Source of the DNA: Saccostrea echinata
Lineage: Eukaryota
Assembly: GCF_033153115.1 (NCBI RefSeq)
Contig: NW_026889805.1
Location: 17,608,001 to 17,672,000, forward strand
Direction of reading: 5' to 3'
DNA: 64,000 nucleotides
The position numbers and the translations under genes were made by a program. Shown here piece after piece: positions 57,349-63,300 of the stretch (position 1 is the stretch's first letter; every line of letters begins with the position of its first letter). The notes beneath the pieces are model-generated. The model was not told the origin of the DNA. It ran no database searches and saw nothing but the letters and a program-made list of their open reading frames with translations.

Positions 57349-60300
57349 ATGTCTGACAAATACGCGTATTTGAAGAAAGTTTTCGACAAAATCCATCAGT
57401 GTAAATATTATGAGAGCGACTTCAGTTCATCAGATGTAGAAATAGCCATTCGAGAACTTAACGCAATATGCCAGACTATACCCATGCTGATTCCCGACAC
57501 ACAGGTGAGTGTAGAGAGGAAGTGTGTCTACCATTATAATAAATTCTGTTCAGAGAACCATGCATTTAAAACTTGACATGTTTGAAATTAACTACTTTGC
57601 GCTAGGTTCGAGAAAAATTCGACCTCATCATTTGAAAAACAGGCACTTAAAAATGCCAAAGATTATTTCTTTCGCTCAGATCTCGAGATTGATGAACCTA
57701 ATGTACCATAGAAATGAAGCTGCAATTGTTGTGCGCTGTAATTGAATGGCTGGGGTGGGGGTGTTTTAACAATTATGTGTTACTTTCCAAAGTTAAAAAA
57801 TAAAAATTTATAACATTTTTATCAACTCTCTGTTGTTTTTAAATCGATTTTTACCTTACTGTATTCATTTTTGAAATCATTAGATAAAAAATTCAAATAT
57901 TTGTAGATTACTTGCAATAATTTGTTTGTACATTTGCATTCTATATTTCGTTATTTATCATTTACATCATAGGCGCTCCCAGTGTAAATCTGTAAATGAC
58001 GAATGATGAGTACAGTATATATTGTACAATTAATCACCCTTCATGAGGTCAACATGGTGAAATGATGACCCGAGACCTGACCCACGAGGTGACCTGACCT
58101 GACCGAGGCCAACGGCCGAGGTCAGGTCAGGTCATCGAGTGGGTCAGGTCAAGGGGCATCATTTCACCATGCTGACCTCATGAAGGGTGATCAATTGTTT
58201 TATTATACCGACAATAATAATAATCAATTTTAACACATATGTAACATTTTATTTCAACAGAATAATGCATATTCTGAAATAACGATTTAAGCAGCAATAA
58301 CTTTGAATTTGAATGTTCAATTGAAAAGTGAAAAAACACATCTTAGAATCATTAAATGATTTACAGAGTCCAATAAAGAACTTTACAGTATCTTTACTTT
58401 TGTTGTTCTTTTCCCACGTAATAGTGAATGTGCACTTGACCGACATTTTTGAATAATGGGCCACAAGAGTTTTGAGGCGTTTGGTCAACTTTAACATTCT
58501 CCTTTTCTTCTGGAACATTTGCAAACAAATCTGAACCATTTTCATCATGTAGGACTTCAGATAGCAATTGTTTGGTACTGACAGTCTCAAATTCACAGTT
58601 ATTCAAATTTAAGAGCTGACTTTCTGAAGTACTGGTACAAGAATTTGTTGGAACAACTGGGTTTTCTAGCCCTAGCTTTGGTGATGGGTAAACCACAGAT
58701 GACAATACATCAAACATTTCTTGCTTTTTTGTTTCACTTACACATCTTGAATAGCTTTTTATGGAAGTTTCGGACTTATGTCCACTGACAGACATGATGT
58801 GTCGAGCTTCTATCCCACCCTGATCCAAACTAGTAATACACGTGGCACGTATGCAGTGGTTTGTATACAGAGTTGAGAGTTCGGCTTTCATAGATATTGT
58901 TTTCATAAAATTTCCCAAAGTATTATGACCTACTGGAGAATTGTCATACCAAACAGCATCTGAATCGTTGATATGGCGCTTCGGTCTCTGCCAAAAATTT
59001 GGATTCAGCTTTCCGAGGTATTTCTCCAGACTAGACACAGGACACTTCTCATCACCTACATGGACATATTAATATGAAAAATTGTAAATCAGTTGAATTC
59101 ATGAAAATTGTCACATAGACAAATATATGATCTAATATTAGTAAATGCTGAAGTTTACATTAATTTTATTTTACATGTATTTTAAGAAGTATATTACCTG
59201 GTATTTCATATATTCTTGCTGAAGATGCATCATGGTCATTCACATCACTTCCTCTGTGATTTTTGGTTTCATACTGAGCGACATTAAGATAATACCTCCT
59301 TCCTTGGCCATCTGTCCTCAAAACAAAATCAGTTTTCTTCATGCTTCTCAGATTTTCCCTTCCTCTTCTACATGTGTAGAACATCACATCAAGAAAAACT
59401 TTATATTGCAATCCCTGTGGACTGTTTCCGTTTAGGACGCCGCTACTATACAATGTTGCCATGTCAGCATCGCTGATAATTTCCTTGTGTTGAGTGGTTC
59501 CCTTTCCAGTTCGTTTGATGTTTGTCAAAACTGCCTTGAACATTTCGTTTGATAGACGAAAATCTGGGTCATTAATAATGTCATATTTATTTTTTTGGAA
59601 AAATCTCTGCAAACCAAACCTGATGCTGATCATGGAAGATCTACTATACAATTCACCATCTTTTCTTCGGAGTTCAGCGTAAAAGTTGATCAGAATTTCA
59701 GCAATTTCACCTTTTGTTTTTTGCAGTATGTTGTCCACAATCAGTCCTTTTTCAGTGCAGTATGTAATGAACACTCGTTTCGCTGAGTCTGTACATTGTT
59801 TTGTGTTGGAACTATCGCGGTTTTCTAGGATTGCTTGTAGTTCCTCACTTGTCAGAGTTGCAAACCTCGATTCGCCAGCCATCGTTTTTGTAAACAGACG
59901 ACAAATTACTCATGAGAAGTGACGTAGTACACAATTTTATAGTCTGTATCTTATTTCTCGAGAATAACTTACAGTTATAGTCTTTATCTAAAAACGGTAC
60001 AGTAAACATGAAGAAAAAACGAAGCGGTCATATGTTCCGCCATTTTTATTTTCTGCACAGGTCAGGTTCAGCGGTCAATAATATTAATGACCGGTCAATA
60101 TCTCATATACATGCAAAAATCAAGTCATTAATGGTCATGTGACACAAAAACGGGTCATAAGCTAATTTTAATGTTTTCTCATCAACCAATCAGATTCTTT
60201 CATTCTAATTGGAGGTATAATAAATATAGGTGTACCCCTCTATAATAAGTTGATTTTTATAGTATAGAGGAAGAGACCTATATATATTGTACTTGTCATT

Positions 60301-63300
60301 TTTCATTTACAGAATTACACGGGGAGCGCCCATGATTTACATCTGCATCGCATATTACACTGTGTGTATTCTGTAATGTTTCAATTTGTCTTGTATTTGA
60401 CTCCCATATGTATTCGGTAATAAAAGTTATTTGTATTCTATAATTGAATAATCGAATACAAATTGGCATGTTCTACTTTATTCTTTTTTAATTTCAAAAA
60501 GGATGTTTACAGAATAACAGATAATGTGCAGTTTAAAGTCTTTTTCCCCATTTACAGAGAGATATAATGAGGCTTTTGAATGCTGCCCAGTCTAGACATT
60601 TACAAGAAATATTAAAATACAAGGCAGACGGCGAGGAAAAATTCCACAATCTGTTGAAAGAATACCAAAACTACCTCCAAAGACAATCAGTTGTTCCAGA
60701 GTTTATCTTCAGTGTAAGTATATGCAAAAGTATATTTAAGGTCAGACGACACGTTCCTCAATAATATAACCTTTTTCAAAAATTTTGTCATTGAAGTATT
60801 GCTACTTTAACAAGTTTCCTCACAAAAATTTAAGTTACATTACCAGGCATTTGTTCAAGATACCATAAGATGCTATTTACTATATTATCCTATTTGAAAT
60901 CACTGACACTGCCAATATCGCAATTTGTTGGTATATTTATCTACTTAGAAATTTTAGAAATAGTTTAAAAATCACAAGACATTGATAATTATCATGCGAT
61001 AAATTTGTTGTATATTACGAAGAGATACAAATCAGATACTCGAGCAACGTGTCGTCAGACCTTAAATGCACAGATCCTAAAATATACATTAAAAAACCCT
61101 GCAATTTCTCGTCCCAAAATGAGAAGAACATAAACATCTTGTGAATATATATTTTTCTAAAAAAAAAAATAATAAGAAACTAAAACATGTATTAACGAAT
61201 CAAATAAAAAGAAGTATCACACTATTGATAATTCTTTTATTTTTTTTTTAAATGTGTTTTGAAAATTAAAATGAATGTACAATTTTTCCTATGAAGAATT
61301 CACCTGCAGGATCTACTAATTCAGAATATTTGGAAACAAGTGAGGATCGCAAATCAAGGTACGTAATTCTTAGAAAATTTTTCCGCAGAAAATATTCTAA
61401 AATGATAGTGTATTCCTGATACGGTACGTGCATGTGACCATAACATTACTTGCTTGAATCGTCTTCATTACTGCATTCTATTTTAGTTTGTCCATGGTTG
61501 ATGACAAGAAACGAAGAGACCACCATCGGACTAAAATAGATCTTAGTGATCTGAATACGCCAGAAAAAATAGCTGAGTACTTCAAAGATCTCTACCATAG
61601 GGAGTGGACTAGCGCTTTTAAAGCATTAAAAGACATGGGTCAAATAAGAAATGAAGAAGAAATAATTAGGAGATTGAGCAAAATGTTAGAAGTAAGTTAT
61701 GTGAAGTAGATAGTGGAGTTTGAAATATATTAGGGGGAGGGGTATTTTCATAAATATAAGACAGAAATAAATGCTTATGTTCATGTATACATGTATATAT
61801 CTGCTCCGATTTTTGGTTTTAAAACCACCATGAACATTGATGTTATTAAAAGATATTGCATATAAGTGCATATTTTAGGAAGATTCAGTACATGTATATA
61901 TACTGGTAAGGGTTTTAACAGATGGCATATGAATTATGTCGAGAAGAAGCTAGAAAACACAGAGGAAAAATAACAGAGGCTCTAGTTCACCCCTTAGGAT
62001 TACCAGCAATAGCAAATGTAAGTGACACCGAGAGTGGGTAAAAATTAATATGTGTTCCATATGTGAGCGTTTCTGCCTCATTTTTTATTTATCTTGAACA
62101 AGAGTATCATTACACCTTTATCATTTCCAAACCATTTTACTCTGTTTCGATGCATGCTTAAAACCTGAAACAAACCAGTAGATAGCATTTTTCCTTGATG
62201 TCTAGAAATTTAAATATGAATTTTGTTAATTCTGTCAAATTGTCTTTGGCCAGAAGATCAGAAAATGTATTATCTCCAAATCGATTCCGAACCTGAGAAA
62301 ACTCATTACGTCACTGAAGGCAAGCAACAGAAAATCACAAAATCATCGTTGATATACCAATAGCATTTTCCAAATTTTCGGCCATTTATTTTCGGCCATT
62401 TTTGTCAAACTTTTAAACACTTAAACACCCGTATAAAATGTTATTGCTATGATTAAAAATACACCAGTTTCAGAAGTGGATCCTATCAAAGCAAAAACCT
62501 AAGGAAATTTTTTTTATCTCATAATTTTCTCGAAACTTTTTGGATTTTTAGATATGCAATCTAATGCAAAAAGAAGTGGCGCTTGAACCGTGGGACAGAC
62601 TGTACTATACATAAAAAAAATGCTGTATAAGTTTTGTTTGTTTGTTTGTTTGTTGTTTAACGTCCCTCTGGAGAATTTTTCACTCATATGGAGACGCCAC
62701 CACTTGCCGGTGGAGAGCTGCAAATTTTGTCCTATACTCGGCACTTACGGCCATTGAGCAGTGAGGGATCTTTTTCGTGCCAGCACCTACTGCGACACGG
62801 GACCTCGGTTTATACGGTCTCATCCGAAGGACCGGTCTCCACGTCCCACAGTGGGATTCGAACCCGCGACGTAAGGATCAACTCCTTACTTCGCGACTCT
62901 AGAGCAGACGCTCTAACCACTGCGCCACGCGGGCGACGTGCTGTATAAGTAGTATACTTTATAATCATTTTGAATTATGTTTCTCGACAAGAAGTAAATT
63001 AATGTACATGATTATAAAAAAAAAAAGGCGTAGCAGTCGGCTGTACGAAAAAAATAACCCTCTTACAAGAGAGATAACTCTAATTGACCCTCTAACAAGA
63101 GAGATAACTCTCACTGACCCTCTTGCAAGAGAGATAACTCTCACTGGCAAAAAAAGTATTCTTAAATTGTCTAGTGAAAATTCAATGTCAGACCAAAGTT
63201 TCCCCGCAGGATACTATAAAACACTTTTTATTCGCGTGAACGTAACTACACAAGACCGTCTGCTCGCGAAAATCTATATAATTCTACTTTTAAAGATTAT

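What the first reader, a model, noticed from the sequence alone, without database searches (positions are those of the whole stretch)
58021..60226. Apparently intact, intron-containing Crypton with all recognisable catalytic residues
Seen: the two ORF-track frames are one gene split by a 142-nt GT-AG intron. The spliced 448-aa product keeps R...HxxR...H...Y with no stops, and both ends of the element can be defined. Established: Cryptons are tyrosine-recombinase DNA transposons thought to move through circular intermediates; their mechanism is poorly characterised and they gave rise to KCTD1/ZMYM/QRICH1-type domains. Inference: a young, possibly active animal site-specific recombinase with its cis sites, usable for mechanistic study.
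Basis: partly seen in the sequence, partly recalled or inferred. Interest (0 to 1): 0.75.

Follow-up and report, generated by a model that had tools for sequence, protein, structure and literature searches.

The report
Young spliced Crypton transposon in oyster
This is one recent copy of a small jumping gene that encodes a Cre-like DNA recombinase, belongs to a known transposon type, and is transcribed and spliced, although this copy has lost three codons that its sister copies keep.

Summary
On the minus strand, 58020-60223 is a 2.2-kb element with one gene: exon 1 59882-59198, a 142-nt GT..AG intron 59197-59056, and exon 2 59055-58394. Contigs of 4 of 4 sequencing runs skip exactly these 142 nt. 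A public NCBI gene model of a sister copy uses the same junction. R, K, HxxR, H and Y are all present.

The genome holds 10 full-length copies that differ by 0.1-3.5%; 4 of the 10 have both exons open. A non-autonomous family of about 820 bp, older and far more numerous, shares both ends. A homologue folds like Cre. It is a DUF3504-type (CryptonA-like) tyrosine-recombinase DNA transposon.

Two qualifications:
- The window copy alone lacks 9 nt (three codons, C-E-S). All 9 other copies and all four runs' contigs have them.
- Recent Crypton-A mobility in oysters is already reported.

New details:
- The ends are short, imperfect inverted repeats.
- An 85-nt-arm palindrome near the 3' end is kept by compensated changes.
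- There is no fixed target-site duplication.
- Target sites resemble the element's 3' end.
- The intron position is shared by distant relatives.

The scan had noted this family before, on this stretch (s1-812263) and on other DNA of this genome (s1-803343).

The parts
58020..60223 (-). Whole autonomous element (2204 bp), from 5' TTATTATACC... to ...ATTAATTGTACA+ATA
   Evidence: Similarity to 9 other full-length copies stops at these points and the flanks are unrelated.
60214..60223 (-). 5' terminal motif TTA+TTATACC. With a 4-nt indel it is an inverted copy of the 3' end (TATTATAC...AATTA).
   Evidence: TTA|TTATACC is found in 33 of 34 independent insertions. Inverted repeat I4. Read directly from the sequence.
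59883..60213 (-). 5' non-coding region, presumed promoter and 5' UTR; contigs reach 59935
   Evidence: The X4 contig covers 59443-59935 and there is no depth beyond 59999. The promoter role is inferred.
59198..59882 (-). Exon 1 coding part (ATG at 59882): N-terminal QRICH1/SAM-like domain and the first half of the catalytic domain, with R173 and K207
   Evidence: ORF. Pfam QRICH1 domain PF25561, E=1e-6. 45% identity to residues 15-240 of the 446-aa homologue P0003.
59056..59197 (-). Spliceosomal intron, 142 nt, GT..AG, phase 1 in a Gly codon
   Evidence: Skipped in contigs of 4 of 4 runs. The NCBI model P0154 reads YEIPGDEKCPV across it. The donor is kept in 10 of 10 copies and the acceptor in 9 of 10.
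58394..59055 (-). Exon 2 coding part including the stop: HxxR (58847-58858), GH (H at 58778-58780), nucleophile Y (58751-58753) and a poorly conserved C-terminal tail
   Evidence: Pfam Phage_integrase E=6e-6 and DUF3504 E=3e-5. 54% identity to P0003 residues 244-363. The XerA alignment places HCIR, GH and Y on HVLR, GH and Y.
58995..58996 (-). Site of the private 9-nt (3-codon, C-E-S) in-frame deletion of the window copy
   Evidence: The 9 nt are present in 9 of 9 other copies, in contigs of 4 of 4 runs and in P0154. No other row of alignment A1 has a gap there.
58199..58221 (-). Internal site ...CGGTATAATAAA just before the palindrome, a 23-nt inverted copy (83%) of the 5' end
   Evidence: the repeat finder I4. 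Shared by the non-autonomous family.
58025..58198 (-). Subterminal palindrome with 85-nt arms, G+C-rich in the centre
   Evidence: I1, 88% complementary. Across 29 copies there are 75 pairs, 98.7% of cells are paired, and 7 pairs changed on both sides yet still pair, against 0-2 in slid controls.
58020..58034 (-). 3' terminal motif ATTAATTGTACA followed by a variable trinucleotide (ATA here)
   Evidence: The 43 terminal nt are 93% identical in a subfamily whose exon 2 is 73% identical.
57968..58019 (.). One arm of the host MITE into which the element inserted (not part of the element)
   Evidence: 63-nt inverted repeat I2. Many uninterrupted copies elsewhere.
60224..60334 (.). Other arm of the host MITE. 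Its 8-bp target duplication ATTTACAT lies at 57960-57967 and 60335-60342.
   Evidence: Read. The uninterrupted paralogue L042 shows the empty site ..CCTATATATAC...

Best explanation
The stretch is one copy of a young family of Crypton-type DNA transposons of the DUF3504 (CryptonA-like) group, in an oyster genome. The closest named protein, 97-99% identical, is from Saccostrea echinata. The 2.2-kb element carries a single two-exon gene for a Cre-like tyrosine recombinase, and nothing else.

Shown here:
- The gene is transcribed and its 142-nt intron is removed.
- Near-identical copies sit at unrelated places in the genome.
- A short non-autonomous family shares both ends.
- Insertions make no fixed-length target duplication.
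- The DNA to the left of insertions resembles the element's own 3' end: ATTAATT, a few nt, then TTA.

Inferred: the recombinase joins the two ends (3' ...ATTAATTGTATA - TTA - TTATACC... 5'), probably as a circle. It then recombines that joint with AT-rich genomic sites that look like it. The element moves as DNA, since every copy keeps the intron. The conserved 3' palindrome and the repeated GTATAATA/TATTATAC motifs are taken to be its cis sites.

The window copy inserted recently into a hAT-like MITE. It later lost three codons, so its own protein may be impaired, while sister copies look intact.
For: Gene and splicing.

Family assignment:
- Exon-wise Pfam hits to QRICH1, Phage_integrase and DUF3504 fall just under the cut-offs.
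- Full-length relatives pass the DUF3504 cut-off; P0010 scores 64.7 bits against 29.7.
- 3476 representative relatives have E<=1e-3.
- Both exons are collinear on an uninterrupted 446-aa homologue.
- R, K, HxxR and G(H) are nearly invariant in 29 rows.
- The AlphaFold model of homologue P0003 (pLDDT 79.5) matches Cre best (E 1e-7, about 350 columns), then QRICH1, Xer, Tn1549 and lambda integrases.

Mobility and youth:
- 10 full-length copies differ pairwise by 0.1-3.5%, and the window differs from L002 by 0.2%.
- The flanks are unrelated.
- 4 of 10 copies have both exons open.
- pN/pS falls to 0.14-0.44 in comparisons with older subfamilies.
- The non-autonomous family gave 392 first-look candidates; the 40 scored are 90-94% identical to the query copy, and both ends are shared.

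Mechanism:
- There is no fixed TSD: the flanking trinucleotides are equal in 9 of 26 insertions.
- The 5' junction is TTA in 33 of 34 insertions.
- Position -11 of the left flank is A in 33 of 34.
- The left flank matches the element's 3' end at 47.8%, against about 30% for controls.
- A head-to-tail joint TTGTATA-TTA-TTATACC exists in the genome.
- Palindrome pairing is preserved through 7 two-sided changes.
Against: - No circle, excision footprint or empty allele at this locus was seen; reads were laid once and only as contigs.
- The window copy has a private 3-codon deletion, and no laid contig lacks the 9 nt, so this copy's own expression and activity are unsupported.
- pN/pS between close copies is 0.3-1.2 on a handful of changes, so it says nothing about constraint on this copy.
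- The exon-wise Pfam scores of the window protein itself are all below the gathering cut-offs.
- The 5' junction is almost invariant while the 3' one varies, and the ATTAATT motif sits 1 nt closer to the junction in targets than in the element. The simple crossover model does not predict either asymmetry.
- Three of the four runs are only guessed to be RNA.
- Placement among named CryptonA families (Repbase) was not tested.
Confidence: 0.85

Rival explanations
1. The element is moved by a separate DDE transposase (for example PIF/Harbinger, which makes 3-bp TWA duplications), and the recombinase gene is a passenger. MarCry-1_FO, a Crypton carried inside a Mariner, is a precedent.
For: The ends are short inverted repeats, TATTATAC / GTATAATA. 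TTA lies at the 5' junction in 33 of 34 insertions and a W-T-A trinucleotide mostly follows the 3' end. One database protein, P0004, fuses DUF3504 with DDE_Tnp_4. MarCry is described in PMC3212892 (passages read).
Against: The two flanking trinucleotides are equal in only 9 of 26 insertions, and in none of the 10 autonomous copies listed. No offset gave a consistent duplication. No DDE ORF lies in the 2.2 kb. The left flank resembles the element's own 3' end, which fits site-specific recombination. P0004 may be a chimeric gene model.
Confidence: 0.06
2. It is a domesticated Crypton-derived host gene (like KIAA1958, ZMYM or QRICH1) and not a mobile element.
For: It has an intron, is transcribed and spliced, and NCBI annotates a sister copy as an ordinary gene. 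The domain set is the same as in domesticated genes, and the homologue's model matches QRICH1 9hjt_H.
Against: At least 10 near-identical copies with sharp common ends sit at unrelated loci, and 6 of the 10 carry stops or frameshifts. Hundreds of non-autonomous derivatives share the ends. All catalytic residues are kept, whereas Kojima & Jurka's abstract says DUF3504 genes have lost them (PMC3212892). This copy lies antisense inside a MITE.
Confidence: 0.03
3. The family is alive, but the window copy is a dead or crippled copy: the 3-codon loss in the segment LNPN[CES]FWQRP impairs the recombinase, or the copy is silent.
For: The deletion is private: 9 of 9 other copies have the 9 nt. All 4 runs' contigs carry the 9 nt. 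None of the other 27 rows of A1 that cover this region has a gap there, and a Cys is common at the first deleted position.
Against: The frame stays open and all catalytic residues are kept. The deleted residues are not among the nearly invariant columns. Contigs drop rare variants, so absence of the window allele in contigs is weak evidence (tool note).
Confidence: 0.5

Closest known systems
CryptonA elements of animals (Kojima & Jurka 2011, PMC3212892; abstract and passages read)
   Same: A single tyrosine-recombinase gene with the R-H-R-Y residues and no reverse transcriptase. The recombinase is related to DUF3504. There is no GCR1_C-type C-terminal domain. Non-autonomous derivatives outnumber the autonomous copies.
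   Different: That paper found no terminal repeats in animal Cryptons. Here the ends are short imperfect inverted repeats, with an 85-nt-arm palindrome near the 3' end and a third copy of the end motif. Placement in a tree with the named Repbase families was not done.
CryptonF-1_cRei of Chlamydomonas (PMC9977147; passages read)
   Same: [quoted passage not shown] Here a W-T-A trinucleotide plays that part, together with an arm that resembles the 3' end.
   Different: That element was seen to move in mutation-accumulation lines and belongs to the CryptonF group. Here mobility is inferred from copies only.
Glomhopper, DUF3504-encoding CryptonA of Glomeromycota (PMC13465315; abstract and passages read)
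   Same: DUF3504/QRICH1-type recombinase; many copies have introns; transcribed.
   Different: That paper reports no consistent intron positions. Here one intron position is fixed in all 10 copies and shared by 10 of the 23 distant relatives whose junction was scored as intron or no intron.
Cre, Xer, lambda Int and Tn1549/Tn916 integrases
   Same: Two-domain tyrosine-recombinase fold and catalytic residues. As with Tn916-type elements, the nucleotides next to the ends vary from site to site.
   Different: The element is eukaryotic and its gene has an intron. Sequence identity is 10-15%. No accessory excisionase gene is present.
Crypton-A polymorphic insertions in Crassostrea ariakensis (bioRxiv 10.64898/2026.02.10.705023; passages read)
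   Same: Recent Crypton-A mobility in oysters.
   Different: That is a population survey at superfamily level. It gives no element anatomy, splicing or target-site analysis in the passages read.

Membership tests
Crypton (tyrosine-recombinase DNA transposon) | Encodes a tyrosine recombinase with the catalytic R, HxxR, H/W and Y (plus K) | tested here: met
   RGRENL, TKNHR, HCIR, SGH and SY are located, aligned to XerA and conserved in 29 rows. The homologue's model matches Cre.
Crypton (tyrosine-recombinase DNA transposon) | No reverse transcriptase or RNase H and no long terminal or split direct repeats (which would make it DIRS, Ngaro or PAT) | tested here: met
   The 2.2 kb hold only the two recombinase exons. 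The repeats found are a short inverted pair and one palindrome. All 10 genomic copies keep the intron sequence, though one (L010) has lost its acceptor AG, which argues against an RNA intermediate.
Crypton (tyrosine-recombinase DNA transposon) | Multicopy, with common ends at unrelated loci and no DDE-type target duplication | tested here: met
Crypton (tyrosine-recombinase DNA transposon) | Moves through excision and a circular intermediate | not testable with these tools
   The only indirect support is one genomic head-to-tail joint. Read laying was used once and showed no end-to-end joint.
CryptonA / DUF3504 clade | Recombinase matches DUF3504 (PF12012) and the QRICH1-type N-terminal domain | tested here: inconclusive
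   The window exons score below the cut-offs when searched apart: DUF3504 24.6 against 29.7 bits and QRICH1 29.2 against 30.8. Of the five full-length relatives of 446-487 aa, all pass the DUF3504 cut-off (30.1-64.7 bits) but none reaches the QRICH1 cut-off. P0154, 97-99% identical to the window exons, has PF12012 and PF00589 precomputed. The joined window protein was not searched, by rule.
CryptonA / DUF3504 clade | Groups with named CryptonA families in a phylogeny | not tested
   Repbase sequences were not on hand. The supplement of PMC3212892 that lists the families is closed.
CryptonA / DUF3504 clade | No terminal repeats (as reported for animal Cryptons) | tested here: not met
   The ends are TATTATAC(CTCC)AATTA / inverted TATTATAC-AATTA, and a 23-nt inverted copy of the 5' end lies before the palindrome. 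This is a descriptive trait of the 2011 survey and not a strict criterion.
Domesticated DUF3504 genes (KIAA1958, ZMYM, QRICH1, KCTD1) | Single-copy host gene whose catalytic residues are lost | tested here: not met
   It is multicopy and decaying, and the catalytic residues are kept.
PIF/Harbinger-type DDE element | 3-bp TWA target duplication at both ends and a DDE transposase | tested here: not met
   The flanking trinucleotides are equal in 9 of 26 insertions. There is no DDE ORF.

The most novel reading that the evidence does not exclude
The element's cis apparatus is a new kind of Crypton recombination site. It would comprise three copies of an 8-nt motif (GTATAATA/TATTATAC) at the 5' end, just before the palindrome and at the 3' end, plus an 85-nt-arm palindrome whose pairing is actively maintained. 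In this reading the palindrome folds or extrudes to bring the internal site next to the joined ends. The recombinase then integrates into genomic pseudo-sites that mimic the joint (ATTAATT-N4-TTA). That would make this the first animal Crypton with a defined att-like donor and target site, ready for a recombination assay.
Probability: 0.25. Interest if true: 0.65.

Novelty: new member of a known kind. Interest (0 to 1): 0.4.

Why it matters
No animal Crypton has yet been shown to move in an experiment. In the passages read, the only direct observations are in Chlamydomonas (PMC9977147), and oysters have population-level Crypton-A polymorphism (2026 preprint). This family offers what a bench test needs:
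- intact, expressed and correctly spliced sister copies;
- sharply defined ends;
- an abundant non-autonomous partner that marks the minimal cis sequences;
- a conserved palindrome;
- a target-site signature that predicts what a good acceptor site looks like.

The family also shows that a spliceosomal intron can ride in a DNA transposon over long periods. The same intron position occurs in relatives only 31-45% identical. This is in itself evidence for DNA-based, not RNA-based, transposition. As a genome feature it is otherwise an ordinary transposon copy in an intron.

Tried and rejected
- **Fixed-length target duplication.** I scanned all offsets 0-7 and k=2-5 on 26 insertions with a permutation control. 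No offset was consistent and the best cases came from TA microsatellites, so I rejected it.
- **'Solo 200-bp palindromic MITEs'.** This was my first reading. The hits are in fact the 3' ends of an ~820-bp non-autonomous family.
- **Tree of intron-bearing against intron-less relatives.** 15 of 23 loci were dropped for short or stop-containing matches. The 9-row tree had weak support, so it does not decide between one or several intron gains or losses.
- **PDB sequence search.** Exon 1 gave no hit at E<=1. Exon 2 gave only XerA at E=0.067.
- **Rfam on 57800-60500.** Nothing at E<=1.
- **Joints.** X4's joint 57958->60370 (side 21 nt) could be an empty allele, but it does not fit the MITE's duplication borders and lies in a local repeat (D7), so I left it unexplained. 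X7's joint 58112->60077 may be a deleted derivative in another organism; I did not follow it.
- **pN/pS among close copies.** There are too few changes for it to mean anything.
- **Supplements of papers were closed.** Additional file 1 of PMC3212892 (family list and termini) and the supplementary tables of the 2026 preprint could show whether this family is already named.
Full report
**1. What is there**

On the minus strand the window holds two ORFs, 59166..59882 and 58394..59038. The sequence shows a donor CCAG|GTAATA, so the exon ends at 59198. It shows an acceptor CATGTAG|GTGATG, so the next exon starts at 59055. The intron 59197-59056 is 142 nt and phase 1. The exons are 685 and 662 nt, which gives 448 codons plus a stop.

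**2. Splicing**

The look-up of sequencing runs listed 20 runs holding part of the stretch. I laid four of them (X1, X3, X4, X7) on 57900-60400.
- All four have a contig with the joint 59053->59196, 'skips 142, CT..AC (cut +2)'. This is the predicted GT..AG intron on the minus strand.
- Depth is zero in the intron bin 59076-59159, beyond 59999 on the 5' side, and in bin 58152-58235.
- Coverage is therefore transcript-shaped (about 58316-59935) and not genome-shaped.
- X7 is on record as RNA; the other three are guessed to be RNA.
- Independently, the closest named protein P0154 (NCBI, Saccostrea echinata LOC133198896, 368 aa) is 99% and 97% identical to the two exon products. It reads ...ARIYEIPGDEKCPVSS... 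across the same junction.
- The two exon products are also collinear on an uninterrupted 446-aa homologue: exon 1 on residues 15-240 and exon 2 on 244-363 of P0003.

**3. One flaw in this copy**

All four runs' contigs have 9 extra nt behind 58995. So do 9 of 9 other full-length genomic copies and P0154 (LNPNCESFWQRP against LNPNFWQRP in the window). The window copy therefore has a private, in-frame loss of three codons. The loss arose after it split from its nearest paralogue L002, which differs from it by 0.2%. In the 29-row family alignment no other row has a gap at these columns. A Cys is frequent at the first deleted position, but it is not among the nearly invariant columns. No transcript contig laid here came from the window copy itself.

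**4. The protein**

- Exon-wise Pfam hits are QRICH1 domain (E 1e-6), Phage_integrase (6e-6) and DUF3504 (3e-5), each just under its cut-off.
- Five full-length relatives pass the DUF3504 cut-off, up to 64.7 bits against 29.7.
- phmmer of exon 1 against 1.84 billion representatives gave 3476 hits at E<=1e-3 and 140 at E<=1e-30.
- The catalytic residues are all present: R173 and K207 in exon 1, and H66, R69, H92 and Y101 in exon 2.
- They align with those of XerA (E 0.067) and lie in conserved columns.
- An AlphaFold model of homologue P0003 built on that alignment (pLDDT 79.5) matches Cre first (E 1e-7, about 350 aligned columns). QRICH1 (9hjt_H), archaeal Xer, Tn1549 integrase and lambda integrase follow.

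**5. Copies**

- The genome (923 Mb) holds the window copy plus nine other full-length copies at 96-99% identity on other contigs. It also holds interrupted and older copies at 84-92% and about 75%.
- Similarity stops at the same two points in all copies and the flanks are unrelated.
- Pairwise divergence is 0.1-3.5%.
- Both exons are open with GT..AG in 4 of 10 copies (window, L003, L004, L005). L002 has one stop. The other five have frameshifts or stops.
- Between close copies pN/pS is 0.3-1.2 on very few changes. Against older subfamilies it falls to 0.40-0.44 (L015, L016), 0.29 (L020) and 0.14 (L022). This is the usual pattern of selection on active lineages and neutral decay after insertion.

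**6. Ends and a non-autonomous partner**

- The 5' end is TTATTATACCTCC... (from 60223) and the 3' end is ...ATTAATTGTACA+ATA (to 58020).
- Read inward, both ends share TATTATAC, then (with a 4-nt indel) AATTA.
- A better inverted copy of the 5' end (23 nt, 83%) lies at 58199-58221, just before an 85-nt-arm palindrome at 58026-58198.
- What looked like hundreds of solo 200-bp palindromes are the 3' ends of an ~820-bp non-autonomous family that shares both termini.
- A search with the internal part of that family gave 392 first-look candidates. The 40 scored are 90-94% identical to the query copy.
- Kojima & Jurka (PMC3212892, passages read) found no terminal repeats in animal Cryptons but did report non-autonomous derivatives.

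**7. The palindrome is maintained**

I aligned 29 palindromes, 9 from autonomous and 20 from non-autonomous copies.
- 75 pairs are predicted and 98.7% of cells pair.
- 7 pairs changed on both sides and still pair, against 0-2 when the partner is slid by 1-3 columns.
- 0 of 500 shuffles reach the observed covariation score.
- Six of the seven changes separate the two families and one varies within the non-autonomous family, so the number of independent events is small.
- Homogenisation between the arms is an alternative to selection.
- The last 43 nt of the element are 93% identical in a subfamily whose exon 2 is only 73% identical (one case).

**8. Insertion sites**

I collected both junctions of 34 independent insertions, 10 autonomous and 24 non-autonomous. 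One duplicate flank pair was dropped, and one locus was lost because its 5' end fell outside the fetched piece.
- The trinucleotide before TTATACC is TTA in 33 of 34.
- The one after TTGTAYA is ATA 13, TTA 9, GTA 3 and others 9.
- The two are equal in 9 of 26, and no offset gives a fixed duplication.
- Eight nt upstream of the 5' TTA the flank has A in 33 of 34, preceded by T-rich positions.
- The left-flank consensus aTTAatt..tt resembles the element's 3' end ATTAATTGTATA. The best match is 47.8% at a 1-nt shift, against about 30% for distal flanks (33 insertions, the pure TA-microsatellite case also dropped).
- The right flank resembles the 5' end only weakly (36.6% against about 32%).
- One non-autonomous copy is followed head-to-tail by a 250-nt 5' fragment, with the joint TTGTATA-TTA-TTATACC.
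- L005 sits in a tandem repeat whose other units give the empty site GGTA|TTATTGAC.
- The window copy sits in a MITE whose uninterrupted paralogue reads ..CCTATATATAC.. at the insertion point.

Together these fit the model that PMC9977147 cites from Goodwin et al. 2003 (passages of PMC9977147 read; the 2003 paper was not seen). In that model the joined ends recombine with genomic sites that resemble them. The asymmetry between the two junctions and the 1-nt spacing shift remain unexplained.

**9. The intron is old and argues for DNA transposition**

- All 10 copies keep the intron sequence. The donor is kept in 10 of 10 and the acceptor in 9 of 10. None of the matches lacks it.
- Of 12 short database relatives examined, 11 end 0-16 residues after the conserved PG at the exon border, as expected for ORFs that run into an intron.
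- Of the 28 metagenome loci whose exon-1 match reaches the border, 3 had no exon-2 match downstream. Of the other 25, 10 have a gap of 96-397 nt at the same codon position, 9 of them with a visible AG|GT donor and 9 with an AG-type acceptor. 13 have no gap and 2 were unclear.
- A tree to count gains and losses was uninformative.

**10. Context**

- The element lies inside a MITE (57968-60334 with the element removed).
- The MITE has 8-bp duplications ATTTACAT at 57960-57967 and 60335-60342 and many copies elsewhere.
- The plus strand shows exon-like ORFs with splice-site-like borders on both sides, so the whole nest probably lies in a host intron, antisense. I did not test that.

**11. Comparison and verdict**

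This is a Crypton by every feature I could test, and DUF3504/CryptonA-like by domain content. Circles and excision are untested. It is not a domesticated gene, a DIRS/Ngaro element or a DDE-mobilised element.

Active Cryptons have been seen in Chlamydomonas (PMC9977147). Crypton-A insertions are among the most polymorphic in an estuarine oyster (bioRxiv 10.64898/2026.02.10.705023). Intron-bearing DUF3504 Cryptons are described in fungi (PMC13465315).

The finding is therefore a well-documented new member of a known kind. It has useful anatomical detail and one caveat about this particular copy. The scan had already noted a like element on other DNA of this genome (s1-803343; not checked by me).

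Noticed in passing
window 57960-60342: The Crypton sits inside a MITE of about 160 bp (57968-58019 plus 60224-60334). Its terminal inverted repeats begin CATRGGCGCTCCC and an 8-bp duplication ATTTACAT flanks it, which is hAT-like. Dozens of uninterrupted copies lie elsewhere in the genome.
   Followed up: partly
window 57349-57504 and 60557-60713, plus strand: Exon-like ORFs with a donor-like CACAG|GTGAGT and an acceptor-like TTTACAG| lie on either side. This suggests that the MITE and the Crypton lie antisense in a ~3-kb intron of a plus-strand host gene.
   Followed up: no
L027:877-1704 and about 40 scored places in G000: An abundant ~820-bp non-autonomous family shares both ends and the palindrome with the autonomous element. 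There were 392 first-look candidates, and the scored copies are 90-94% identical to the query copy.
   Followed up: partly
L061 and L087 (G000:C62:2596050-2598030): A full non-autonomous copy is followed head-to-tail by a 250-nt 5' fragment of another copy. The joint has a single TTA between the two ends.
   Followed up: partly
Alignment A1, columns about 650-710: A short C-terminal motif (F-x-N-C-x-V/F-x-I) is conserved in most full-length relatives after a variable linker. The window has NVGQVHIHYY. Animal Cryptons were described as lacking a C-terminal domain.
   Followed up: no
window 57900-60400, read laying: Two unexplained joints. In X4, 57958->60370 has only 21 nt on its shorter side. 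In X7, 58112->60077 skips 1964 nt with 7 other letters between, and may be an internally deleted derivative in another organism.
   Followed up: no
P0004 and P0007: These database proteins of 1129 and 1314 aa carry two DUF3504 units, and P0004 also carries a Harbinger-type DDE_Tnp_4 domain. They may be chimeric gene models or nested transposons.
   Followed up: no
window 60734-60759 and 61042-61067: A 26-nt inverted repeat (92% complementary, 282 nt apart) lies downstream of the exon-like ORF. It is probably another small MITE.
   Followed up: no
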